A DNA stretch of 64,000 nt from Chrysemys picta bellii (GCF_011386835.1 NC_088803.1:5828001-5892000), one strand, 5' to 3'. Positions 19,863 through 38,300 are shown, counted from the stretch's first letter. The notes: generated by a model not told the origin, from the letters alone. Numbers and translations are program-made.

Positions 19863-20708
19863 GCCCCCGCCCTCTGACTTGGGCGGCTGCCCTGTTTCTC
19901 AGTGCTTGGACTTGTGGAGACTGCATTGGGGGTGCTCTGGGCCCTGGACACCCCAAAAGTCCTCTGCCCTGGGCTCAATACCCTGGCAGTTTGAGGGGAG
20001 GAGTCAGTGTCCCCCCACAATCACTGGGGTGCAGGGATTTGGGAATCCCCCGTGGGACATTTGATGTGTATTATGGACTGATGTGTAATTTACTGGGTGG
20101 GGAATGGGGCGCGGGGCCTGTCTTCTGTAGGGGTGCCGGCCCCAGGGCAGAGAATGGGGCGCGGGGCGTGGGGCCTGTCCCCTCTAGGGGGCGCTGGTCC
20201 TGATCCAGCCCGAAGGCAGGGACTGGCTGGCTCAGGGGGCTGTGGAATGGGGTGTGGGGCCTTTTTTCCCCCCCCGCATGCCGGATGGGGCCTGCACCCC
20301 CTAGAGGGGCATCTGGGCTCAGCATTGGGGGACCTCTAGCAGGAAACTCTGCCCCCCTAAATTTGGGGGAGCCTGGCTGGAGACCCCCACCCCATCTTCG
20401 TGACTTGTTCTCCCTGCCCTGGCATCCCTTGGCCAGCTTGGGGGGGGTGGGAGGGGGGCAGATATGAGGTCGCCTGTCTGGCAGCCCCTGGAGTTAGGGG
20501 GCTGGGATGTTGGGGGGGCCTTTCCCCACCGCCCTTTTCAGGTAGCTCCCCACCCTGTTGGGACGGCGGGGTGCAGGTGCAGGGGTGTGTGGCTGGAATG
20601 TGGGGTGCAGCCCCCGATTCTGGGAGCGGGGCACAAAGCGCTAGGACAGTTTGGGGGCACCCGGGGGCGGGGGGGGGGGGACTCTGTCTGTGCCACCTGC
20701 TGTCTGTC

Positions 20709-20714
20709 AATAAA
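20709..20714 (+). terminator. Probable DCAF11 poly(A) signal
   Basis: First AATAAA I found downstream of the DCAF11 stop. Confidence 0.7.
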
Positions 20715-20797
20715 CCTCTCGACATTCCTCAGGCTGCGTCCTTGGGGGGGCGGCGCCCGGGCTCAGCTGTTGCCGCGCGTCACTGTCGGGGGAGGCC

Positions 20798-21924
20798 ATG
20801 GCCGGGAGCGGGGGCCGCCTGCCCCTCGTCCTGCTGGCCACCGTGGCCGGCTGGGCCCTGGCCCTGGCCCGGGGCCTGGTGTTCCTGAGCAGTGAGCGCT
20901 GTGCCTGGCTCCTGGGCGCCCCCTGCCTGCGGCGGGCGTATCACGCCTGGCTGGCGGGCGCCGTCCTGCTGGGACCCCTGCTGCACCCCTTCGCCGACCC
21001 CCATGCCATCCTCGCCAACCAGCGCAACTTCTTCAGCCGGTGAGCGAGGGGGCAGAGCCCCATGGGCAGCAGATTGGGGGGGGAGTGGAGGATGGGAGGC
21101 AGGGGGTCACGGTCGGGGCTGTCAGGATGGGGGGAAAGGAGGTCCAGGGCTGGGGGGAGATGTGGGGGGCAGGCAGGGAGTCCTGGGGGTGGGGTGGGGG
21201 GGCCGTGGAGGGGACAAGGAGGCCCAAGACCCGTAGGGCTGTGGGGGACCGGGCAGGGAGGCTGGAGGCTGGCATGGGGCCACCGGGGGCCACCCCCTAA
21301 CGTGTCCCCTTTCCCCACAGCACGTTCGTGGCCTCGGCCTGGGGCTGGACCTGCATCCTGGCGGGCGGCTTTGCCCTGCTGGTGAGCTATGGGGCGACGG
21401 GCCGGGCGCTGGCCCCCCTGCGGCCGCTGGCCCGGCTGGCCGTGGGCACGGGGCTGCAGCTGGCCGCCGCCGCCGCCTTCGGGCTTGTGGAGGAGCTGAC
21501 GGGCTACTGCTACGCCCCGCTGCCGGCTGGCACCCTCCTGCCCCCCCTGCCCGACCGGCCGGGCTGCTTGGCCGCTGGGCACCGCTGGCGCGGCTACCTG
21601 CCCTCCCGGCCCGCCTTCCTGCTCACCTTCTGCTGCCTGCTGCTGGCCGAGGAGCTGGCCGTCTTCCGGCGCTACCTGGCCCGCGGGCACCCGGCCGGCG
21701 CCCCCCTGCGCCTCGTCTTCCTGCTCAACGTGGTGCTGCTGGCCTTGTGGAACCTCCTGCTGCTGGGCACCGCCGTGTACGGCCCGGCCTACGGGCCCCA
21801 GCTGGTGGGGGCCGCCGTGGCCACGCTGGCCTGGTACCTCACTTACCAGGGCTGGTACCGCGCCCGCTGGTCCCCCGGCCGCCCGGGGGCCGGCCTCTTC
21901 CTCAAGGGCGAGCCACGTGCCTGA
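20798..21924 (+). CDS. FITM1: Fat storage-inducing transmembrane protein 1, 281 aa, divergent at the active-site motifs
   Basis: Exons 20798-21039 and 21321-21924 (846 nt). FIT signature FLLTFCCLLLAEE, plus GAPCLRRAYHAWL and SAWGWTC. Syntenic position between DCAF11 and PSME1. Confidence 0.92.
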
Positions 21925-22402
21925 GGGACCCAGGCATCCGGGAGAAGCACAGCCCCCCTCCCCCCCAGTGTGGAGAGGGATTGTCTCCACTGCCAGTTGG
22001 GGGTGCTAGGGGGGTGAATGGGGGGGAGGCAGGAGCAAGGGGGAGCTGGCTGCTGAAGGAACCCAGGTGTCCTGGCGGGGGGAGCAGACCCAGGAGGCCA
22101 TGGGAGGGGACCCAAGTGTCCGGGAGAGGATCCCTCCCCCCACCCTCGAAAGGGGCTGAAACCCTCTCCTGAGGGAAAGGGGGTTGGAGGGGGCAGGCGT
22201 CCAGGAGTTGGAGGGTGTTGGGGTGGGAGGGGAACCCAGGTGTCCGAGGAGGAATGGAGGCCCCCCTCACTGTTTCCTGGGGGGGGGACAGGAAGACTGG
22301 GGGGGTTAATTCAGGGATGGGGCCCCAGGCATCTGTCGGGGTGGGGGGGAAATCCCAGCATGGAGTGAATGACAACAGGGGGACCCAGGCATCCGGGGCA
22401 CA

Positions 22403-22408
22403 AATAAA
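22403..22408 (+). terminator. Probable FITM1 poly(A) signal
   Basis: AATAAA about 480 nt after the stop, followed by GT/T-rich sequence. Confidence 0.7.
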
Positions 22409-23098
22409 ACATGGCCGCCTGCCCTCAGTGGGGAAAAGCCTGTCGCTGTGGTTTATTGGGGTTGCTCGGGGGGGGGGGGACACTCCTCATGGGAATGATG
22501 GGGGAAGGGGACCCTGGTATCTGGGGGATTAGCTGAGGGTGGGGGCACTGCTGGAGGGAAGCTCGCAGCACTGGAGTCCTCCCTCCCCCAGCTGCGGGCA
22601 CTGCTCTGAGCTCACAGCCCAGCAACCCCACCCCCATCGGTGGGGGCACTGTGCGGGGGAAGCTCGTAGCCCAGACACCCACCCCCTGGGGGCACGGTGG
22701 GGGGGGGGGGAAAAGCTTGCAGCCCAGACACACACACACACTAGGGGGGGGGGGGGGAGCTCGCAGCCTGGACCCACACAACCTGCCCACGGGGGGCGGG
22801 GGGGAAGCTCTTGCAGCCTGGACCCCCTTCCCCTACTGGGGACACTGCTGGGAGAAGCTCACAGCCCGGACCCACACACCCTGCCCCCTGGAGGCACTGC
22901 TGGGGGAAGATCAGAGCCCAGGCATCCCTCCCCGCCGGAGGCACTACGGGGGGAAGTTCGCAACCCGGACCAGCCCCGCCCCCCCTCGGGGGCACTGCTG
23001 GGGTAGCTCGCAGCCCGGAGATCCCGCCCCCACTGGGGACACTGTTGTGGGAAGCTCGCAGCTCGGACTCGCCCTCCCCCCCCCCCCCCCCCCCGGCC

Positions 23099-23212: not shown

Positions 23213-26200
23213 ATGGCTGCGCTGCGGATCAGCCCCCAGGCCGAGGCCCAGGTGAGGGGGGGGGACCTGGCCGGGGAAATGCGGGGCGGAGGGGGAGCAG
23301 ATTTATGTGGGGCCTGGTTGAGGGTGGTGGGGCCGAGGGGTGCAGGAAAGAGAGGGCTGGAGGGTTCGGGGAGCCGGAAGGGGGAGCTTGGCTGGGGGGC
23401 AGGGAGGGGGTGTTGGGCTGGGGGGCTCGGGAGAAGGGGGGTGCTGGGATGGGGGTTCGGGGAGCTGGGATGGGGAGCTTGGGGGGAGCGGGGCTGGAGG
23501 GTTCGGGGGAAGGGAGGGGGTGGTGGATTGGGGGGGCTCAGGGAAAGGGAGGAGGTGCTGGGGGGCGAGGGGGGAGCTGGGATGGGGGGTTCGTGGGAAG
23601 GGGGGAGCTGGCCTGGGGGACTCGGGGAAGGGAGGGGGTGCTGGATTGGGGGGCGAGGGGGAGCTGGGCTGGAGGGTTCGTGGGACGGGGGTGCTGGGGG
23701 CTCGGAGGGAGCTGGGTTTGGGGGTTCGTGGGAAGGGGGAGCTGGGCTGGAGGGTTCGTGGGACGGGGGTGCTGGGGGCTTGGAGGGAGCTGGGTTGGGG
23801 GGTTCGTGGGAAGGGGGGAGCTGGCCTGGGGGGCTCGGGGGAAGGGAGGGGGTGCTGGATTGGGGGGCGAGGGGGAGCTGGGCTGGAGGGTTCGTGGGAC
23901 GGGGGTGCTGGGGGGCTTGGAGGGAGCTGGGTTGGGGGGTTCGTGGGAAGGGGGAGCTGGGCTGGAGGGTTCATGGGACGGGGGGGCTGGGGGGCTCGGA
24001 GGGAGCTGGGTTGGGGGGTTCGTGGGAAGGGGGGAGCTGGCCTGGGGGGCTCAGGGGATGGGAGGGGGTGCTGGATTGCGTGTCTGCCTGGGGAATTCGG
24101 GGTGCAGCTGGGGGTAGATGAGGGGGTCTGTGCCTCTCCCCAAGCCCGGGCTCTGCCCATCGCCCTGAGGGGGCAGCACGGTGACCCCAGTGGGGAGGTT
24201 TCCATGGGGCAGTCGGTTCCCAGGCCCGGGGGGAAGGGCCCCTCCACGCCCCATCACCAGCGCAGATGGGGCAGGGCCGGGCAGGTGGCCGGGGGGATCG
24301 GGTGTCGGGGGCTGGCGGGGTGCCCGGGGCGGGGGGCTGGCAGGGAGCCCAGGCTTGCTGGGGGCTGGCAGAGAGCCTGGGCGGGGGGAGGGGACGCGGA
24401 GGGAGCGTCCTGCTGGGACATTTGACCCCCCGGAAATTTCTTTCCCCCCCCGCAGGTGGATTCCTTCCGGACCCAGCTCTGCGCCCAGGTGAGACGCTGC
24501 AAGCTTCCCCCCAGCAGTGCCCCCAGCCAGTGGGAGGAGGGGACCCAGGGCTGTGAGCTTCCCCCAGCAGTGCCAGCCCCATACTGACCCTCTTCCCCCT
24601 CCCCCCAGGCTGAAGCGCTGGTTGGGACCCGGTTCCCCAGTAAGATAACTCAGTTGGATGCTTTCCTCAAGGTATTTGGGGGGCAGGGAGGGGGCGGGAG
24701 GGGGGATGTGGGTTTGCCTGGGACACGGGGTGGGGGGATTTAAGGGGCTCGTCAGGGGGCAGGGAGGGGGGCTGCTTGGGGGGCAGGGAGGGGGTGGGAG
24801 GGGGGATGTGGGTTTGCCTGAGACACGGGATGGGGGGATTTAAGGGGATCGTCAGGGGGCAGGGAGGGGGCGGGAGGGGGGGGGGGTTTGCCTGGGACAC
24901 GGGGTGGGGGGATTTAAGGGGATCGTCAGGGGGCAGGGAGGGGGGCTGCTTGGGGGGCAGGGAGGGGGCGGGAGGGGGGATGTGAGTTTGCCTGGGACAC
25001 GGGATGGGGGGATTTAAGGGGATCGTCAGGGGGCAGGGAGGGACATTAGAGGGTTTTGGGGGGCAGAGGGTGGGAGGCAGATTTGGGGATGGGGCAAGAG
25101 GGTTTGGGGGAATGTGGGGGCTGGAAGGGGATTGGGGAGCTAGGTGGGTGAATTATGGGGGCTGCGAACAGGGTTGGTGGCTCAGGGGACGGGTGGGGGC
25201 ATCATGGGGGGTGGGGAAAGTGGGGGACCAGGAGAGGGGGGTTGGGGCAAGGGTGAAAGGTCACTCTGGGGGGCCCAGCTGCTCACCACCCCTCCCCATC
25301 CCCCAGGACCCGGCGCTGAACGTGGGGGACTTTGAGTCCCTGCGGGCCCCGCTCGACATCCCCATCCCCGACCCCGCCAAGGAGAAGGCAAAAGCCGAGC
25401 GCCGCAAGGTGAGCTGGGGGGACCCCAACATCGGGGGGAGCCCAACACGCCCCCCCCCCGGCGTGACAGCTGAGACTGGGGGGGAGTTGGGTCATGAGGG
25501 TCCCACAAACCCACAGGTCAGATCTGGGGCTCTCTCCCTCCCTGCACCCCCATTTTCTTATTCTGTTCTTTTGGGGGGTTCACCGGATTGGGGGGTTCAC
25601 AGTTCCATCGCCCCTCAAGGGAGGAGGGTGATTGGGGGGGGGGGCTGGGACTTCTACCCTACACCTCCATTTTCTCCTGTCCTTCTCCTCCGGGGTAGAA
25701 GGAAGAAAAGAAGGAAGAGAAGAAAGACGAGAAGAAGTCGGAGGAGGAGGATAAAGGTGAGTGGGGGGCCCAGATCTGGGGGGGGGCCTCCATTGACGGG
25801 GATTGGGCCCCTAGCCCCGCTGGTTCTGGGGGTCTGTGGGTCCGACCCCCCCATTTGTCTGTCTTTCCCCAGCGCCCCCCTGTGGCCCCGTGAGCAGCAA
25901 CGAGACGGTTGTGGGGCTGGTGAGCCGAGTGAAAGCCGAGATCCAGGGCGCCAAGGAGGAGCTGGGGCTGGTGAGTGTGAGACGGAGCCAAAATATGACC
26001 CCGGCCTGGCCACCGTGCAACACGCACCCTGCACGACGCTCGTCCCCCGTGCGCACAACACGGCCCTGGCCAGGCCACCGTGCAGCACACACCCTGCACG
26101 ACGCTCGTCCCCCGTGCGCACAACACGGCCCCGGCCAGGCCACCGTGCAACACGCACCCTGCACGACGCTCGTCCCCCGTGCGCACAACACGGCCCTGGC

Positions 26201-29200
26201 CAGGCCACCGTGCAGCACACCCCCTGCACGACGCTCGTCCCCGTGCGCACAGCACGGCCCCGGCCAGGCCAGGCCACCGTGCAGCACACCCCCTGCACGA
26301 CGCTCATCCCCCGTGCGCACAACACGGCCCCGGCCAGGCCACCGTGCAACATGCCCCGTGCACGACGCTCGTCCCCCATGCACACAACATAACCCCGGCC
26401 TGGCCACTGTGCAACACGCACCCTGCACGACACTCGTCTCCCGTGCGCACAACACGGCCCCGGCCAGGCCACCGTGCAGCACACCCCCTGCACGACGCTC
26501 GTCCCCCATGCACACAACACGAGCCTGGACACTGCCACCGTGAAACACACACCCTGCACGACGCTCGTCCCCTGTGCACACAACATGACCCCGGCCTGGC
26601 CACTGTGCAACACGCACCCTGCACGATGCTCGTCCCCTGTGCGCACAACACGGCCCCGGCCAGGCCACCGTGCAGCACACACCCTGCACGACGCTCGTCC
26701 CCCATGCACACAACACGACCCTGGACACTGCCACCGTGAAACACACACCCTGCACGACGCTTGTCCCCCGTGCGCACAACACGGCCCCGGCCAGGCCACC
26801 GTGCAACACGCTCCGTGCACGACGCTCGTCCCCCGTGCACACAACATGACCCTGGCCTGGCCACTGTGCAACACACAGCCTGCACGACACTTGTCCCCCA
26901 TGCGCACAACACGACCCTGGACACTGCCACCGTGAAACACACCCCCTGCAGGACGCTCGTCCCCTGTGCACACAATGTAAGAGGATGCACCACACGCCTA
27001 GGTAACACACCCAGCAGGTCCCATCCCCTCCAACGGGGCAGAAGGACATACACTCATGGTCTCTCTCGTCCCCAGGTCTCTGTCTGGGTTCAACTCCAGG
27101 TGCCCCGTATCGAAGACGGCAACAATTTTGGGGTCGCAGTCCAGGTGAGTGTCCCCCCTTCTCCAACCTGCCCCCCACTTACCCCCCCAGCTCATTAACC
27201 CCCCCTCTCCCCCTCCCCAGGAGAAGGTGTTTGAGCTGATGACGGGCTTGCGGACGAAGCTGGAAGGATTTCAGACCCAGATCTCCAAGTGAGTCCCAAT
27301 TTTGGGGGACCCCTTCCACACCCAAATCCAAGCCAGGGACCCCTCCCACCCCCGTCCCATCAACTTGGTTAAAAGCAAAACAAAGAATCAACCAACCACC
27401 CACAAGAACCAAGAATATTCAAGGGCAAAACCGGCTGTTAAATGCAGGGGGGAAAGAGCTTGACAAATCCAAAGGAGTTAAATGCCAAAAACCCTTGAAA
27501 GGAAAAATTGGATTTTTTTTCACAAAAGCAAGGAATCGAAATGGCAACAAACTTCATTCAATGCAACCTTTTAAGCTCACAAAAATCCCAAGGAAATTAA
27601 ATCCCAAACGCTGCGCCCAATGCCGAGACATTTATTTAAAAAAAACAAGGAAATTAAATGCCCAAAATGCTCATTAAAAACAAACGTGGCGTTTTTCCAA
27701 CAAGCAGGAATTCAAATGCCACATTTTGTGGAAATGCAAATTTTTAAGCTTGCCCCAAAAAGGAGGCAATTAAAACGACACCAATTTTGTTCATTTTTGT
27801 AATACTCTGCAAAAGAGAGGAAGTTTTAATGTAAAGGGGTGGGGGAGCTTTGTTCACAGCAAAAGTTTTAGGGTCATCAGGAACCAAGGACATTTTAATG
27901 CCTAAATAACTTCGTTCAATGGGAAAACGATGAGCATTGACCAGACGGAACATTTTAATGCAAAATCTTTGTGAAATGTGACATGTTAAGGTTGCAAAAA
28001 GACCATTTTGCATTTCACAGGTTGTTGTTTTTTCTTTTTCATTAACAATTAGAACGTTTGCATTTAACTAAGTTGTCGACCTTTAAGTTTTGGTGGCCGT
28101 TTGGTTTGGTTTTTCGGAGAACTGAAAAATTTCCACATAAATTTAATTTTAAAAAGCCTGTTTAAAAATCAAATTTGAGTTTATTTGGTTGTTTCTGCAG
28201 CCTTAAAGTTTTGCACTTCAAAGGGGTTTTCCATTAAAATTCTGTTTGTTTGCAAAGTACAGTTTGTCCATTTGAAATGTTTTCACATTTGTTTTTCCAA
28301 GTTAAATTGGCCTTTAGTTTTATCCAAAACAATTGTTTCCTCAGTCCCTTTGCAGCCATTTTCTGAATTAAATGCAAAAATTTTAATGTGCAAAAGCCAA
28401 ACTAAGGAAACTAAAATGCAAACAAACAAACAAACAAACAGGTATTTTCACACCCTCAGTACGTTCCCTTTTCTATGCATTAAAATTCCCTAATTTTGCA
28501 GGTTTATTTTTTTACTTTGCACATTTTCCTGCATTTAATTTTTGTTTCAGAACCATAAAACTTGCATTTCATAACATTTGTTTGCATTAAAAATTTCTCC
28601 CTACCAGCACACATTTCCCCCCAAGCTTAAAATGTGCATTTTAAATTGCCTCCTATTTAAAACAATCTTAATATTTTGCATTTAGCAACCATTTGTGCAT
28701 TACAATGATTTTGACTTCACAACCTTGATATTTGATATTTTAAGAAGTTTTGCATTACAATTTTTCCTCTCCTTTGCAGCCTTCATATTTTGTAATTTAA
28801 AAAGGAAGTTAAAATGCACAGTGTCGGTAGATCGAAAAAACATTAAATGCAAAATGTGAAGGATGCAAAGGGGAAGGTTACTGTAAAAAAAAATTGTTCA
28901 ATGCAAACGTAAAGATTGGAAAAATATTGTGTGTGTTAATTTCCTCGTTATTGGAAATTAAAATTCTTGCACTTTAAAAAAAGTAAAAAACATTACATGC
29001 AAAATCTTTAAGCCACAATCCTACGAATACTTATACATGTGCTTGACTTTACTCCTGGGTGTTAGTATCACGGGTAATAGACCTAACATTAAGCCCAGGT
29101 ATATGTGTTTGTGGAATTAGCAACTGAATTTGCAATTTAAAAAAGCTGTGAAGAGTAAATGCAAAAATTGTTAAATGCAAAATTATCCTGCCCCCCCCAA

Positions 29201-30806
29201 AGGAAATTAAATGCAATAAAACTTAGTTTCCACATAACATTTAAGCTTGAAAACTAGCAAAAAAAATAGTTAGTTTCCAGAATGCAAAAAATTTTTGTCA
29301 GATGCAAAACATTTTAGTTCATCATGTTTTTGCACGTGCAGTTCTGTGTTATGAATCGAATTTGAGGTCCGTACAAGGAGCCATAATACTTTGCAGGGAC
29401 CAGTATTTGTGCACATTGAAATTCCTTGGTCACTGGTGTTCCCTCAAGATTGAAAATAAAATCGGAAATGCCAAATTTTTAATCTTGCAAAACCAAAGCC
29501 TCCCCCGAGGAAACGTAACAAGCCTAATGCCGCTCAATGCCAAATCAATGAACGCGGCCAAGAGGGTTTGAATGCAAATCCAACTTTGTTACCTGCAGAT
29601 CGTTTCCTGGTTCGGGGGGGCGCGTTACATTTTCTGCAATTTTGTTAAGTTAGGAGGGTAGAAAACAAGGAAATTCTCACTGCCCCAAAACTTCATGACG
29701 GTCACACAGTGGAGAGATTGGGCTACCCTTGTAGGGGGAGCCACCTGCAAGGCGCCCCCCGCAATGAGAGCCCCCTGCTCGTCCTTCCTCACCCCCAATT
29801 TGGGGCTTCAGCTCTGACTTCTGATTCCCCCGCCACACATAGGTATTTTTCCGAGAGAGGCGACGCAGTGGCTAAAGCGGCCAAAAATCCTCACGTGGTG
29901 AGTGTCTGGGATGGGTGCAACCGCCCGGACGCCTGGGTTCCCTGCTGTGCGGGAGAGGGGGTGCCCAGACACCAGGGTTCTCCACTGTGTGGGAGGGGGA
30001 CCAGGGTTCTCCACTGTGTGGGAGGGGGGGGGCGCCCGGATGCCAGGGTTCTCCACTGTGCGGGGGGAGGTGTGGGGGTGCCCGGATGCCAGGGTTCTCC
30101 ACTGCGTGGGGGGGGGGGCACCCGGACACCAGGGTTCCCCACTGCACAGGAGGGGGACTGCCCGGAAGCCTGGGTTCCCAGCAGGGGCTCTGGGACACCA
30201 GGGATGGTGGGGGAGACACTGGGCCCCTCATTTCCCTGGTTCTGTCCCCCACAGGGTGATTACCGGCAGCTGGTGCACGAATTGGACGAGGCGCAATACG
30301 CTGAGATCCGGCTGATGGTGATGGAAATCCGGAACCTCTACGTGAGTGGGGGGGGTGGGGGGAATCAGAGGGTTCGGCCAGGGGGATTGAGGGGAATAGC
30401 TGGGAGAGTGCAGTGAATGGGGAGGGGGGGGCAGCTTCTCTTCTGTGTTGTAACCCCGTCCCCCCACTTCTCCCCTGAACCCCCATTCCACTCTCAGGCT
30501 GCCCCGGCCTCAGCCATCTGGGAAGGGAGAGACAGCCGAGTTGGGGGGCTTTTCTGGGAGGGAGCGGGTTTGGGGGGTGAAGGCCAACATTAATGGACCC
30601 CAGAAGACCTGGATCCCCCAGGGTAGGGACTTGGGGACAGAGGTGAACCCCTAATTTAGCCTCACCCCTAGAAGCCGGCAGCACCCTAATCCTAGACCGA
30701 CTCCCCCATCTCCTCCCACCCCCAGGCCATTCTCTATGACATCGTGGTCAAGAACTTCGAGAAGATCAAGAAGCCACGGGGCGAAACCAAGGGCATGATC
30801 TACTGA
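23213..30806 (+). CDS. PSME1: Proteasome activator PA28 alpha, 250 aa
   Basis: 11 exons: 23213-23251, 24456-24488, 24609-24671, 25307-25408, 25699-25756, 25873-25970, 27076-27144, 27221-27288, 29843-29897, 30255-30341, 30726-30806. KEKE region, activation loop PRIEDGNNFGVAVQ, C-terminus KPRGETKGMIY. Confidence 0.96.
25996..26980. repeat. 65-bp CpG-rich VNTR, about 15 copies, PSME1 intron 6
   Basis: Unit ccggccaggccaccgtgcaacacgcaccctgcacgacgctcgtcccccgtgcgcacaacacgg. Period measured from 26051 to 26116. Confidence 0.95.
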
Positions 30807-31925: not shown

Positions 31926-33322
31926 TCAGGCACTGCCATTGGCGACAGACACCAGCCGGGCGATCTCGGTGTTGAGGTGCTGATTGGTCCAGTCCCGTCT
32001 GATGTCATCAAGGTGGGTGTCGAAGTCGACCAATTGGGTGTGAGCTTTAGCCTCCAGCAGGGACTTGCAAATGTGGCGGGAGGATTCCCAGTCGTGCCAC
32101 ATGACTCTGAAAGAGACAGGAGGGGGTGAGGTAAGTCCCGAACGCCTGGGTCCCATCCCTGGTCACCCTTAGGGCTGGGAGCGTGGGGTGGGCACTGTCC
32201 CGGACGGCTGGGTCCCATCCCCGGTCACCCTGAGGGTTGGGAGCATGGGGTGGGGGGCGCCGTCCTGGACGCCTGGGTCCCATCCCTGGTCACCTTGAGG
32301 GCTGGGAGTGTGGGGGGTGACATCCTGAACGCCTGGGTGCCATCCTCGGTAACCCTGAGGGCTGGGCAGCGTGGGGGCACCATCCCAGACTCCTGGGTCC
32401 CATTCCCAGGGATTGGGTAGCATGGGGGGCCCATGGCAGGTTTTGGGGGAACCCCACTCACAGGTTCTTGTCCTTGGGGAGCCAGTGCCGATCCCGCTGC
32501 TCCAGCACAACAACGGGGGGCACGCGGGGGTTCTGGGTCAGTTTCCGGTTATCCAGCTGGGGGGAAGGAGAAGGGGGACAGTTGGGGGGGCACGCTGGGA
32601 AGACCCCCCAACCACCCTCCAAATGTCAATCACAGCCCCCCACCCTCTGTAGGCACCCCCATGGGGTCCCTGATCACAGCCCCACACACACACCCTGCCC
32701 CTAGGGGGCCCACTCCAGCCCCCCAAAACCCCAGATCTCACCATGATCAATACAGCACCCTCAGAGAGCTCAGCCAGGCGTCCAGCCATCTTCAGAGCCA
32801 GGGGGGTGGGGCTACATGGGGGGGCAGGAGAGATGTCAGGGGGGAATGGGGACCCCCTCCCTGCCCCCCTGGGGACCCCTAAAGTTACCTCATGTCGTCC
32901 AGCCCGGCATTGGCCTGGTAGTACCCAGCCACCAGCAGGTTAGAGCGAGATGCCCACAGATCAACCTGGGGAGAGGGAAGAGGTTGAAAGGGGAGCGTGC
33001 CCCATACAGCGCCCCCCTGCTGCCCCACACGGAGCCCCCAACAGCCACTGCAGCCTGGCGCCCCCAGCCCCCCCACCCCATAGGGAGCCCCCCTGCCCAG
33101 CCCCGACCACCCCCTGCCGCCCACCTGGTTCAGAGCCACCTCCAGCATGACGCTGAGAGCCAAGTTGCTGTGGAAAAGGGGGACGCAGTCGGTGAGGAAC
33201 AGACACTCGGGGGGGCCCCCCCGGCGCCCCAGGAGCAGCCCATTGACAGCGGCGTGGGGGTGCCGGGCGGCGTGGAGGCACATCTTAGCATAGGCCTGGG
33301 TGGAGACCTCCACCTCGCCCAT
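31926..33322 (-). CDS. EMC9: ER membrane protein complex subunit 9 (MPN-like), 206 aa
   Basis: Minus-strand coding exons 33322-33125, 32965-32889, 32811-32742, 32556-32462, 32106-31926 (621 nt). [32 protein letters not shown]; [18 protein letters not shown] probable non-coding exon 1 has its donor near 34241. Confidence 0.95.
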
Positions 33323-35321: not shown

Positions 35322-38300
35322 TCAGTACATGGACGGCTTCTCCTCGCCCTTGGGGTTTGTCAGCTTCTCCAGGTTCTGGGTGAGGATGTGATAGAGCTCG
35401 GCCTGGGAGGGGAGACAAAAGAAAGGAGCTCGAGGGGGCCAGAGAAACCCCCACAGAGAGATTCCCCCTGAACCAAACCCCTCCCATTGGAGCCCCCCCA
35501 GCCCTCACTGAGACCCCCCCAGAGCCACGCCCCCTGGGGTCCCCTCCCTATTCCCTGCTCCTCCCCAGCCTTCACTGAGACCCCCCCCAGAACCACACCC
35601 CCTGGGGTCCCCTCCCTATTCCCCCCCCAGCCCTCACTGAGACCCCCACAGAACCACACCCCCTGGGGTCCCCTCCCTATTCCCCCCCCAGCCCTCACTG
35701 AGACCCCCACAGAACCACACCCCCTGGGGTCCCCTCCCTATTCCCTGCTCCCCCCCCAGCCCTCACTGAGACCCCCACAGAACCACACCCCCTGGGGTCC
35801 CCTCCCTATTCCCTGCTCCCCCCAGCCCTCACTGAGACCCCCCCAGAACCACACCCCCTGGGGTCCCCTCCCTATTCCCTGCTCCCCCCCAGCCCTCACT
35901 GAGACCCCCACAGAACCACACCCCCTGGGGTCCCCTCCCCGTTCCGTGCCCCACCAGCCCTCACTGAGACCCCCCCAGAACCACACCCCCTGGGGTCCCC
36001 TCCCTATTCCCTGCTCCCCCACCAGCCCTCACTGAGACCCCCCCAGAACCACACCCCCTGGGGTCCCCTCCCTATTCCCTGCTCCCCCACCAGCCCTCAC
36101 TGAGACCCCCACAGAACTACACCCCCTGGGGTCCCCTCACCGTTCCCTGCCCTCCCCAGCCTTCACTGAGACCCCCACAGAACCACACCCCCTGGGGTCC
36201 CCTCACCGTTCCCTGCCCTCCCCAGCCCTCACTGAGACCCCCACACAACCACACCCCCTGGGGTCCCCTCCCCATTCACTTCCCCCCAGCCCTCACTGAG
36301 ACCCCCACAGAACTCCCCTCCCCCCAGGGTCCTCTCCCCATTCCCTGATCCCCCCAGCCCTCGGAGACTCCCACAGAACCACAGCCCACGGGGTCCCCTC
36401 CATGTTCACTCCTCCCTCCAGCCCTCACTGAGACCTCCACAGAACCACACCCTCCGGGGTCCCCTCCTCGTTCCCCGCCTCCCCCTAACCCTCACTGAGA
36501 CCCTCACAGAACCACACCCCTGGGGTCCCCTCCCTGTTCCCTGCCCCGCCCAGGCCTCACTGAGACCCCCACAGAACCACACCCCACAGGGTCCCCTCCC
36601 CGTTCCCAGCCCCCCATACTCACGTAGAAGCCCCGAATGTCCAGCACCATGGTCCGGATCTCCCCATAGATCACCTCGTCCCGCTCATGGACCAGAGTCC
36701 GGTAATCCATCTGGGGGCAGGGGACGCTGGTTAGCTTGGCTGGGGGCACTGCTGTGGGGAAGCTCACAGCCCTGGAGCCCCCCAACCCCCTGGCTCAGGG
36801 AACTGCTGTGGGGAAGCTCACAGCCCCGGAGCCCCCCAACCCCCTGGCTCAGGGCACTGCTGTGGGGAAGCTCACAGCCCCGGAGCCCCCCAACCCCCTG
36901 GCTCAGGGCACTGCTGTGGGGAAGCTCACAGCCCCGGAGCCCCCCAACCCCCTGGCTCAGGGCACTGCTGTGGGGAAGCTCGCAGCCCCGGAGACTCGCA
37001 GACCCTGTTTCAGGGCACTGCTGTGGGGAAGCTCGCAGCCCCCAATCACTTACCACGTGGGTCTCCTTCGAAGCCTTCGCCACGGCATCTCCTCGCTCAG
37101 AGAAATATCTGGGGGTGAAGAGAGAGTGAGAGCAGGACCAGACCATTACCCATAGTGCCCTGGGGCACAGACACCCATGGGGAGAGTATTACCCACAGTG
37201 CCCTGGGGCTGGGGCACCAATGTAGAGCATTACTCAGGATTCCCTGAGGCATGAAAGCCAATGTAAGCAATTACCCACCATGCCCTGGGGCAGAGACATG
37301 GTTGGGGGGGCGTGACCCACAATGCCCTGGGGCAGACATGGGGGATGGTGAAACTCACTTGGAAATAGCTGTCTGGAAGCCCTCGACCTTGGTCTTGATG
37401 GCCGTCACCCGCTCCAGCACCTTCTCCTGGAGGAGGGGGGAGATGGGGGTGAGATTGGGGTCCCTGTAGAGGGGGGACTGGCTGAGGGGGGACTGAGGGG
37501 GCCCTTACCTGAATGGCCACCCCAAAATCATTCCCGTCCTCAATTCTGGGGATCAGGTGATGGATCCAGGTGATGACCTGGAGACAGAGAGACAGTGAGA
37601 GGGGGCCAGGGCACTGCTAGGGGGAAGCTCGCAGCCCTGGCATCTCCCACCCACTGGGGACACCATTGCAGGGAAGCTCGCAGCCCTGTGGGCACTGCTG
37701 CAGGGAAGCTCGCAGCACCAGCGCAGAGGAGGGTTCGGGGGGGCTCACCAAAACACATTTCTCCTTCAGCTCCCGCACCTCCGGCTTGACCCGGCCCAGC
37801 AGCGTCACCATGGCCTCGTTGCCCTTCAGGTAGCCGCATTTGGGAGCTGGGGGGGGGGGGAGGAGGGGGGGAGAAAAGGGAGGACAACAGGGGGTGAGTC
37901 CACAGCCCAACCCAGCCCCCCCAAAATCCTGCCCCCCAAAACTGCCCCAAAACTCACTCTCCTTTTTCTCCTCCTTATCCGTCTCCATGTTAGTCGAGTC
38001 CTGGAGGGGGGAAGGGGACAGGAAATGAGTCAGCGCCTCACCAGCACGGGGTGGTGTAACACAGGGGGAGGAGGGTTACCCCAAAACTCACCTCGTCCTC
38101 ATCCTTGGGGGGCGGGTCAGGGATGGGGATATCCAGGGGGGCCCGGAGGGTCGAGAGATCCTTGATGTTCAATGAATCCTCCTGCATGACAGCAAAGTTA
38201 TCTGTGGGGGGCGCTCTCCCGGGGGGAAAAAAGGGGGGGGCAGGAGTGTGAGGGCCAACCCGGGGGGCACTGACAGTGTGGGGGAGATCCCAGGGCTGAC

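What the first reader, a model, noticed from the sequence alone, without database searches (positions are those of the whole stretch)
21601..21790. FITM1 lacks both putative catalytic histidines (His to Pro twice)
Seen in sequence: RGYLPSRPAFLLTFCC (CCC at 21610-21612) and TAVYGPAYGPQLVGAAV (CCG at 21784-21786). From my recollection of the family, human FITM1 has RGYTVSSHTFLLTFCC and VIYFHQYTHKVVGAAV, and the equivalent two His residues of FITM2 are the lipid-phosphatase-like / acyl-CoA diphosphatase catalytic residues. The ORF, splice sites and FLLTF...EE signature are intact. Inference: a retained pseudo-enzyme whose lipid-binding role is uncoupled from catalysis, or a gene under relaxed selection.
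Basis: partly seen in the sequence, partly recalled or inferred. Interest (0 to 1): 0.72.

Follow-up and report, generated by a model that had tools for sequence, protein, structure and literature searches.

The report
Turtle FITM1 lacks its catalytic histidines
The painted turtle's muscle-type fat-storage gene FITM1 has prolines where its enzyme relative FITM2 has its catalytic histidines, yet it is expressed and conserved; all turtles sampled share this and most other vertebrate FITM1 genes also lack these histidines, so it is a modest addition to a known pattern.

Summary
In the two-exon FITM1 gene (+ strand, 20798-21924), codons 21610-12 (CCC) and 21784-86 (CCG) encode Pro. They sit exactly where FITM2 and mammalian FITM1 have the C2 and C3 histidines. 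A third triad position (21796-98) is also Pro. Contigs from independent runs, including spliced poly(A) transcripts, carry the same codons.

The feature is not peculiar to this gene copy. All six turtle species with both sites resolved have it, so it predates crown turtles. Of 143 FITM1 clusters, only 10 keep both histidines (mammals, tuatara, snake). Ray-finned fish, frogs, birds, cartilaginous fish, coelacanth and lizards each lack one or more. FITM2, including the painted turtle's own, always keeps them. Hayes et al. 2017 had already noted altered key residues in "a few FITM1s, particularly in fish".

The turtle gene is not decaying. Exon 2 shows 28 synonymous against 6 non-synonymous differences from a sea turtle. 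Turtle omega is about 0.12-0.16, against 0.05 in squamates. All 37 family-wide conserved columns are kept, and the predicted fold is confident and PAP2-like.

The changes carry a strong GC-biased signature (31 weak-to-strong against 5 strong-to-weak; GC3 0.96).

Best reading: an ancient, retained, non-catalytic FIT paralogue. This is a new member of a known kind, of modest interest.

The parts
20798..21039 (+). FITM1 coding exon 1 (ATG at 20798; 80 codons plus 2 bases of a split Arg codon)
   Evidence: Translation matches the N-terminal part of the database protein P0001 and aligns with turtle and squamate FITM1. The donor GT is at 21040-41. Transcript contigs end this exon at 21038/39.
21040..21320 (+). 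Single intron (281 bases, GT..AG)
   Evidence: table 5: a joint that skips 281 bases, GT..AG, in one contig each of runs X10 and X13.
21321..21924 (+). FITM1 coding exon 2 (200 codons plus stop TGA at 21922-24); holds TM3-TM6 and the former active-site motifs
   Evidence: The translation is 100% identical to Chrysemys picta bellii FITM1 (P0001). It gives a weak Pfam FIT match on its own (20.3 bits against a 21.4 cut-off).
21610..21612 (+). C2-motif position (H-1; FIT2 His155 equivalent): CCC = Pro
   Evidence: It shares a column with the His of the S-G-H motif in all FITM2 sequences and of the S-S-H motif in mammalian FITM1. Reads agree; one other species has the synonymous CCT.
21616..21654 (+). 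FIT signature FLLTFCCLLLAEE (TM4), intact
   Evidence: F180, L182, L187, E191 and E192 are among the conserved family columns that are kept.
21784..21786 (+). C3-motif position (H-2; FIT2 His214 nucleophile equivalent): CCG = Pro
   Evidence: It shares a column with the His of the Y-F-H motif in FITM2. No read difference.
21796..21798 (+). Fifth position of the C3 motif (D-3 equivalent; His in mammalian, lepidosaur and coelacanth FITM1, and Q/E/H in FITM2): CCC = Pro
   Evidence: Hayes 2017 defines the HxxxD/E/Q/H motif.
21925..22437 (+). 3' UTR, with AATAAA at 22403-22408 and the poly(A) addition site at about 22437
   Evidence: The X10 contig runs to 22437 and is followed by a run of 21 A (tables 7 and 8). 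The sequence was read.

Best explanation
This is the painted turtle's orthologue of FITM1 (FIT1), the vertebrate-specific paralogue of the ER acyl-CoA diphosphatase FITM2. On the stem lineage of turtles, all three residues that align with the lipid-phosphatase-type catalytic triad changed to proline: C2 His, C3 His and the fifth C3 position. Each change takes a single A-to-C step, CAY to CCN. They happened during a burst of strongly GC-biased substitution, probably GC-biased gene conversion in a very GC-rich region, at sites whose constraint had already lapsed in FITM1. The protein kept its six-helix PAP2-like scaffold and every other family-wide conserved residue. It is transcribed, spliced and polyadenylated, and it has been under purifying selection ever since. 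It therefore most likely works as a non-catalytic FIT protein: an ER membrane protein that binds or partitions neutral lipid into droplets, as shown for mammalian FIT1. The catalytic job is left to FITM2, which keeps both histidines in the same animal. Shown here: the substitutions, their register, their age and spread, expression, selection, GC bias and fold. Inferred: loss of enzyme activity, the lipid-partitioning role, and biased gene conversion as the driver.
For: - Identity and orthology: exon 2 is 100% identical to C. picta bellii FITM1. The FITM1 clade has 100/100 support and turtles are monophyletic at 100/100. A WD40 (DCAF11-like) gene lies upstream in three turtle loci, and PSME1-like and PSME2-like exons lie downstream in the window.
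- Register: the two Pro fall in the FITM2 His columns in three independent alignments. FIT2 H155 and H214 are required for activity and function (Becuwe 2020). The triad is defined in Hayes 2017.
- Paralogue control: the painted turtle's own FITM2 (P0324) keeps the S-G-H and Y-F-H motifs.
- Reads: spliced poly(A) transcript contigs and a DNA-like contig carry the same codons.
- Age: six turtle species, including the pleurodire Pelusios, have Pro at both sites; Gopherus has Pro at the C3 site but a rearranged C2 loop.
- Selection: Chrysemys against Lepidochelys exon 2 has 28 synonymous and 6 non-synonymous differences, pN/pS 0.09, Fisher p = 9e-11. The codon model gives turtle omega of about 0.12-0.16, with 2dlnL = 122 against omega = 1.
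- Conservation: all 37 columns that are at least 80% conserved across FITM1 and FITM2 are kept.
- Fold: the AF2 model has pLDDT 92.3 and pTM 0.89. The three Pro sit at helix starts or in the short loop between helices, where Pro is tolerated. The top structural neighbours are PAP2/LPT enzymes: PgpB Z 9.7, Aur1, SMSr, LPP1, G6PC1.
- GC bias: GC3 is 0.96. The Gly+Ala+Arg+Pro (GARP) share is 0.45 against 0.26 in squamates. Polarised changes at codon positions 1-2 are 31 weak-to-strong, 5 strong-to-weak and 6 neutral.
Against: - No enzyme or lipid-binding assay exists for any turtle FITM1. I also found no paper testing whether even mammalian FIT1 is catalytic, so 'loss of activity' is inferred from FIT2 mutants.
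- Turtle omega is about three times the squamate value (0.05).
- Exon 1 is weakly constrained (8 synonymous against 8 non-synonymous differences).
- Other turtles (Gopherus, Mauremys, Pelusios, Carettochelys) carry indels in the luminal loop and evolve faster. Constraint is therefore uneven, and in some turtle lineages the gene may be drifting.
- The runs with transcripts are coded 'organism B' and differ from the window at a few synonymous sites, so they may come from a very close relative or another population.
- Contig depth cannot rank expression, and the tissue is unknown.
- Biased gene conversion is inferred from composition only.
Confidence: 0.72

Rival explanations
1. The gene is simply decaying under relaxed selection. 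Loss of the triad would be the first step to a pseudogene, and the open frame is kept by chance or by the slow turtle clock.
For: Turtle omega is about three times that of squamates. Exon 1 has pN/pS of 0.41. Gopherus, Mauremys and Pelusios have luminal-loop deletions or duplications and have lost the second loop cysteine. The Mauremys model is flagged LOW QUALITY. Pfam FIT scores below its cut-off on exon 2.
Against: The frame has stayed open in every turtle sampled across the pleurodire-cryptodire split. Omega = 1 is rejected by 2dlnL = 122. There are 28 synonymous against 6 non-synonymous differences between Chrysemys and Lepidochelys. All CDS differences seen in the X10 and X13 transcript contigs are synonymous. 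All 37 conserved columns are kept. Spliced polyadenylated transcripts exist.
Confidence: 0.1
2. The turtle-stem burst was adaptive. FITM1 would have been remodelled for a new, turtle-specific role (for example lipid handling in anoxia or hibernation), and the prolines are part of that new function.
For: The turtle stem is long (0.48 substitutions per site) and is followed by near stasis in Chrysemys and Lepidochelys, with end branches of 0.011 and 0.015. Three prolines at the three former triad positions look non-random.
Against: The changes are overwhelmingly weak-to-strong (31:5), with GC3 of 0.96 and GARP enrichment. This is the signature of biased conversion or mutation pressure, not of selection. 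The same positions are also lost, to different residues, in fish, frogs, birds and sharks, which points to lapsed constraint. Pro is one A-to-C step from His.
Confidence: 0.08
3. The protein is still an enzyme and uses other residues, for example the conserved His in the G-H-x-W motif or the E-E pair, or a different chemistry.
For: Two other His remain in exon 2, in the G-H-R-W and G-H-P-A-G motifs. The E191/E192 pair is invariant across the family.
Against: In FIT2 and Scs3, a single His-to-Ala change at either the C2 or the C3 position abolishes function. The PAP2 mechanism needs a phosphohistidine intermediate on the C3 His. The remaining His are not in the C2/C3 columns in any alignment. 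The luminal loop that carries C2 is dispensable in several turtles.
Confidence: 0.04
4. Artefact: a sequencing or assembly error, a wrong exon model, or a misalignment creates the apparent His-to-Pro changes.
For: The region is extremely GC-rich with long G runs, where assemblies often err. The NCBI model carries a dubious N-terminal extension.
Against: Contigs from four runs of four studies agree at all three codons. The splice joint is confirmed. Five other turtle assemblies show the same residues. The flanking motifs align without gaps.
Confidence: 0.01

Closest known systems
Mammalian FIT1/FITM1 (muscle and heart ER protein that partitions triglyceride into lipid droplets; Kadereit 2008 and Gross 2011, as summarised in PMC9644577)
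   Same: It is the orthologue. Shared features: a two-exon gene, the same neighbours (a DCAF11-like gene upstream, PSME1-like exons downstream), about 62% identity over exon 2, the same FLLTFCC..EE signature, the same loop cysteines and the same C-terminal W-S-P-G-R-P-G motif.
   Different: Mammals have His at all three triad positions (S-S-H, and Y-F-H-Q-Y-T-H); the turtle has Pro at all three. Turtle GC3 is 0.96 and the Gly+Ala+Arg+Pro share is 0.45, against 0.85 and 0.30 in rhinoceros.
FIT2/FITM2, acyl-CoA diphosphatase (Becuwe et al. 2020, PMC7659722)
   Same: Same family and fold. The C2 and C3 motifs align column for column.
   Different: FIT2 needs H155 and H214; the turtle FITM1 has Pro at both. 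All 103 FIT2-type representatives keep both His, as does the painted turtle's own FITM2, P0324.
Fish FITM1s with altered key residues (Hayes et al. [quoted passage not shown]
   Same: Same kind of event: a FITM1 that has lost the LPT-type catalytic residues and is predicted to be inactive.
   Different: The residues differ: D/P/T in teleosts and gar, P/P/P in turtles. This is an independent loss in a different clade. The present survey shows the loss is the rule, not the exception, in FITM1.
PLPPR/LPR/PRG proteins (PAP2-fold lipid phosphate phosphatase-related proteins that lack the catalytic His; mentioned in Hayes 2017)
   Same: A membrane PAP2-type scaffold is retained after substitution of the nucleophilic His, with a presumed lipid-sensing or lipid-binding role rather than a catalytic one.
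   Different: A different branch of the superfamily and a different cell location (plasma membrane against ER). There is no direct homology beyond the fold (structural Z of about 8-10 to PAP2 enzymes).

Membership tests
FIT/FITM family (Pfam PF10261), FITM1 orthologue group | Sequence homology to FITM1 proteins | tested here: met
   Exon 2 is 100% identical to C. picta bellii FITM1. E-values are 1e-77 to 1e-69 against squamate and mammalian FITM1. It falls inside the FITM1 clade at 100/100. Pfam on exon 2 alone is just under the cut-off (20.3 against 21.4 bits).
FIT/FITM family (Pfam PF10261), FITM1 orthologue group | Conserved gene structure and neighbourhood (two coding exons; DCAF11 - FITM1 - PSME1) | tested here: met
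   Two exons, with the joint confirmed by transcripts. A WD40 gene lies upstream in turtle loci. PSME1-like exons lie at 24606-30803 on the + strand and PSME2-like exons at 36582-37577 on the - strand.
FIT/FITM family (Pfam PF10261), FITM1 orthologue group | FIT signature in TM4 (FLLxxC...EE), the loop 3/4 cysteine pair and the conserved Asn of exon 1 | tested here: met
   All 37 columns that are at least 80% conserved over 63 FITM1 and FITM2 sequences are kept, including N77, C144, C163, F180, L182, E191 and E192.
FIT/FITM family (Pfam PF10261), FITM1 orthologue group | Multi-pass helical membrane fold | tested here: met
   AF2 model with pLDDT 92.3 and pTM 0.89, with long helices at 8-40, 42-65, 87-107, 114-141, 177-201, 208-234 and 238-261. 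Hydrophobic segments were found.
Catalytically active LPT/PAP2-type FIT enzymes (FIT2-like acyl-CoA diphosphatase) | C2 histidine (S-G-H motif; FIT2 H155) | tested here: not met
   Pro, CCC at 21610-12.
Catalytically active LPT/PAP2-type FIT enzymes (FIT2-like acyl-CoA diphosphatase) | C3 nucleophilic histidine (FIT2 H214) | tested here: not met
   Pro, CCG at 21784-86.
Catalytically active LPT/PAP2-type FIT enzymes (FIT2-like acyl-CoA diphosphatase) | Fifth residue of the C3 motif (D/E/Q/H) | tested here: not met
   Pro, CCC at 21796-98. The motif is defined in Hayes 2017.
Catalytically active LPT/PAP2-type FIT enzymes (FIT2-like acyl-CoA diphosphatase) | PAP2-like fold | tested here: inconclusive
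   VIA-align: seven of the eight best chains are PAP2/LPT enzymes (PgpB Z 9.7 with 186 residues aligned; Aur1 8.9; SMSr 8.4; LPP1 8.1; G6PC1 8.0). These Z values are in the range that helical bundles can reach by chance. Foldseek found nothing significant.
Catalytically active LPT/PAP2-type FIT enzymes (FIT2-like acyl-CoA diphosphatase) | Acyl-CoA diphosphatase activity | not testable with these tools
   This needs a biochemical assay.

The most novel reading that the evidence does not exclude
FITM1 as a whole, not just the turtle copy, may be a pseudoenzyme lineage. Its conserved vertebrate function would not need the phosphatase-type active site, because the triad has been lost independently in ray-finned fish, frogs and turtles, and in part in birds, lizards, coelacanth and cartilaginous fish. 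The histidines kept in mammals, tuatara and snakes would then be either vestigial or a lineage-specific retention. The turtle's triple proline would be the most complete natural 'catalytic-dead' FIT1, and a ready-made reagent to separate the scaffold role of FIT proteins from their enzymatic role.
Probability: 0.45. Interest if true: 0.5.

Novelty: new member of a known kind. Interest (0 to 1): 0.33.

Why it matters
FIT proteins are debated: do they act by binding triglyceride, or by their acyl-CoA diphosphatase activity? FIT2 clearly needs its histidines. FIT1 appears untested in the literature I could search. Turtle FIT1 has been conserved and expressed for roughly 200 million years (my dating of the crown-turtle split, from general knowledge) with all three triad positions turned to proline. 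Together with the same losses across most vertebrate classes, this argues that FIT1's selected function is non-catalytic. That is directly testable. It also corrects the published impression that such losses are confined to a few fish sequences. Finally, it is a clean example of GC-biased substitution erasing an active site once constraint has lapsed.

Tried and rejected
- Pfam on the single exons: exon 1 gave nothing, and exon 2 scored just below the FIT cut-off. This says little, because the exons were searched apart.
- Solved structures by sequence: no PDB chain matched the FITM1 profile.
- Foldseek against the PDB: nothing significant. Only the VIA-align wide search brought up PAP2 enzymes.
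I made only counts of state changes and a hand parsimony argument.
- IQ-TREE's own optimiser stuck at omega = 1 for the turtle codon set. I replaced it with a likelihood grid.
- Biopython YN00 failed for most pairs at this extreme GC3, so I relied on NG86-type counts and the codon-model grid.
- The Mauremys protein has no gene on record, so no DNA was available.
- No crocodilian FITM1 turned up in any search, so the archosaur side rests on birds alone.
- Literature searches for a FIT1 enzyme assay or for 'FITM1 pseudoenzyme' found nothing.
- The window's two exons were never joined by me. Full-length work used the database protein by reference (P0001:65-345), and all codon statistics were made per exon.

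Full report
**What is there.** The window comes from the painted turtle: exon 2 translates to a protein 100% identical to Chrysemys picta bellii FITM1 (P0001). The gene lies on the + strand and has two coding exons.
- Exon 1 runs 20798-21039.
- The intron runs 21040-21320 (GT..AG).
- Exon 2 runs 21321-21924, and an Arg codon is split across the joint.
- A third proline, CCC at 21796-98, fills the fifth position of the same C3 motif.

**Reads.** I laid contigs of four public runs from four studies on 20700-22450.
- A 1254-base contig (X10) and a 1259-base contig (X13) skip exactly the 281-base intron. The X10 contig ends at 22437 in a run of A, 29 bases after AATAAA (22403-08). The gene is therefore transcribed, spliced and polyadenylated.
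- A DNA-like contig (X4) covers 21207-21936, including part of the intron.
- None of the runs differs at the three Pro codons, except X18 (another species), which has 21612 C>T. That gives CCT, still Pro.
- Every coding difference in X10 and X13 is synonymous.
- Run names are coded. X4, X10 and X13 are 'organism B', and X10 and X13 differ from the window at five to nine positions over about 1.2 kb. They may come from a very close relative or another population.

**Orthology.**
- A maximum-likelihood tree of 30 FITM1 and 10 FITM2 proteins separates the two paralogues at 100/100. It places the window's protein in a monophyletic turtle group at 100/100.
- A WD40 (DCAF11-like) gene lies directly upstream in three other turtle loci.
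- In the window, PSME1-like exons follow on the + strand (24606-30803) and PSME2-like exons on the - strand (36582-37577). This is the mammalian order. Earlier notes of this scan on the same window (PSME2/EMC9, RNF31, IRF9) fit it.

**Register.**
- Becuwe et al. 2020 show that FIT2 needs the C2 histidine H155 and the C3 histidine H214. H214 is the predicted nucleophile.
- Hayes et al. 2017 define the triad as H-1 in the S-G-H motif, and H-2 plus a fifth residue in an HxxxD-like motif. In FITMs that fifth residue is usually E, sometimes Q or H.
- In three independent alignments (A1; 289 sequences; A2), the turtle prolines fall in exactly those columns, without gaps in the flanking motifs.
The second is the fifth-position residue, and it is also Pro in the turtle.
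- The painted turtle's own FITM2 (P0324) keeps the S-G-H and Y-F-H motifs. So do the FITM2 of Pelusios, alligator and chicken.

**How widespread.** States are written as C2 / C3 / fifth C3 position.
- Turtles are P/P/P: Chrysemys, Lepidochelys, Carettochelys, Mauremys and a Logan-derived turtle sequence. Pelusios, a pleurodire, is P/P/A. Gopherus has the two C3 prolines, but its C2 loop is rearranged. The state therefore predates crown turtles.
- Outside turtles, with names:

| Group | State |
|---|---|
| Mammals, tuatara, Vipera | H/H/H |
| Four lizards | H/Y/H |
| Coelacanth | P/H/H |
| Three frogs | Q/P or T/Q |
| Teleosts and gar | D/P/T-like |
| Sturgeon and bichir | D/Q/H |
| Elephant shark | Q/H/Q |
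| Stingray | P/H/E |
| Birds | Q/H (rarely C or N)/R |

- Of 143 FITM1 clusters, 15 have His at C2, 11 at C3 and 10 at both.
- Among 126 representatives at 50% identity with both columns filled, all 103 FIT2-type proteins keep both histidines. Almost all of the 23 exceptions are FITM1.
- On the gene tree, His status changes at least 3 times at C2 and 5 times at C3.
- By hand, on the accepted species tree, keeping His along the backbone with independent losses costs as few residue changes (7) as any alternative at C2. It costs one nucleotide step fewer, because D is two steps from Q or P. This is inference, not a reconstruction.
The published remark that this affects 'a few FITM1s, particularly in fish' understates it.

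**Selection.**
- Exon 2 of Chrysemys and the sea turtle Lepidochelys differs by 28 synonymous and 6 non-synonymous changes: pN/pS 0.09, Fisher p = 9e-11. Exon 1 differs by 8 and 8.
- A GY+F3X4 likelihood grid on four turtles (188 codons) peaks at omega 0.12-0.16 and rejects omega = 1 by 2dlnL = 122. Four squamates peak at 0.05.
- Other turtle lineages are faster. Pairwise NG86 omega is 0.4-0.5 for comparisons involving Gopherus or Carettochelys. They also have indels in the luminal loop that carried the C2 motif. Gopherus has a tandem duplication and has lost the second loop cysteine.
- In the tree the turtle stem is long (0.48), while the Chrysemys and Lepidochelys end branches are 0.011 and 0.015. 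This is an old burst followed by near stasis in these two lineages.
- All 37 columns that are at least 80% conserved across 63 FITM1 and FITM2 proteins are kept in the turtle.

**GC bias.**
- Turtle exon 2 has GC3 of 0.92-0.99 and GC at positions 1-2 of 0.66-0.70. Squamates have 0.69-0.84 and 0.51; rhinoceros has 0.85 and 0.56.
- Gly+Ala+Arg+Pro make up 0.43-0.49 of the protein, against 0.25-0.30.
- At first and second codon positions where rhinoceros and all four squamates agree and the two slow turtles share another base, 31 differences are weak-to-strong, 5 strong-to-weak and 6 neutral.
- His to Pro is one such A-to-C step. This is the signature of GC-biased gene conversion or GC mutation pressure. 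That it drove the three changes is an inference.

**Structure.**
- I folded the database protein by reference (P0001:65-345, the same product as the two exons) with a 63-row alignment. The result has pLDDT 92.3 and pTM 0.89.
- In its numbering, Pro178 is in the first turn of helix 177-193. Pro236 is in the three-residue loop 235-237. Pro240 is in the first turn of helix 238-261. Proline is tolerated at such places, so the scaffold need not suffer.
- Foldseek found no significant PDB match.
- An exhaustive VIA-align search put PAP2/LPT enzymes in seven of the first eight places: PgpB Z 9.7, Aur1 8.9, SMSr 8.4, LPP1 8.1, G6PC1 8.0. This agrees with Hayes 2017, although such Z values are not decisive for helical bundles.

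**Verdict.** The best reading is an ancient, turtle-wide, expressed and constrained FITM1 that cannot use the FIT2-type catalytic mechanism. It is one more independent case of a loss that has happened in most vertebrate FITM1 lineages, and here it was probably pushed through by GC-biased substitution. Loss of activity and a remaining lipid-partitioning role are inferred, not shown. I found no paper that tests catalysis by any FIT1.

**Limits.**
- No crocodilian FITM1 was found.
- Contigs show presence, not expression level or tissue.

Noticed in passing
Proteins P0005, P0008, P0009, P0011, P0012: Lizard FITM1 (Elgaria, Sceloporus, Zootoca, Sphaerodactylus and one unnamed sequence) has Tyr at the C3 nucleophile position, in the Y-L-Y-E-Y-S-H motif. 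Tuatara and Vipera keep His. This predicted-inactivating change sits in a gene under very strong purifying selection (omega 0.05).
   Followed up: partly
Proteins P0156, P0157, P0203, P0210, P0218, P0219, P0268, P0285: Bird FITM1 exists but is extremely divergent (stem branch 1.17) and GC/Ala/Gly-rich. It has Gln at C2 in an S-P-Q motif, as frogs do. Several NCBI models are fused or misnamed (ZFP36L3-like, IF-2-like). In the tree birds join frogs at 97/96; this is probably long-branch attraction, but it was not resolved.
   Followed up: partly
window 20400-20800; protein P0001 residues 1-64: The NCBI painted-turtle FITM1 model carries a 64-residue N-terminal extension. In this window that upstream frame is out of phase with the ATG at 20798; a long G run near 20660-20680 differs. 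It also runs across an AATAAA at 20709-14, which looks like the upstream gene's poly(A) signal. The extension is probably an annotation artefact.
   Followed up: partly
L003:2700-3410 (Gopherus evgoodei): The Gopherus FITM1 luminal loop has a tandem duplication of the L-P-P-R-A-E-R-P-G motif. It has lost the second loop cysteine and the G-H-x-W-x-G-Y motif. Its 387-residue NCBI model reads exon 1 on into the intron.
   Followed up: partly
window 21928-22525 (+), 29924-30175 (-), 32137-32398 (-), and scattered: A 15-base motif, ACCCAGGYRTCYGGG, occurs 21 times in the window against 0.3 expected by chance. Six copies lie in or just beyond the FITM1 3' UTR, and there are two other clusters. Unrelated contigs join at these places in the reads. 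It looks like a turtle interspersed or tandem repeat family.
   Followed up: partly
window 20941-21990, - strand: A 349-residue ORF runs antisense through the whole FITM1 gene. It is Pro/Gly/Ala-rich, as expected by chance opposite a coding region with GC3 of 0.96. The transcript contigs are spliced in the + sense. No evidence of a gene.
   Followed up: no
Proteins P0262 and P0289: Two non-FITM1-looking representatives also lack His at C2: P0262 is Q/H and P0289 is D/Q. They may be further independent inactivations in invertebrate duplicates, of the kind Hayes 2017 describes. They were not identified.
   Followed up: no
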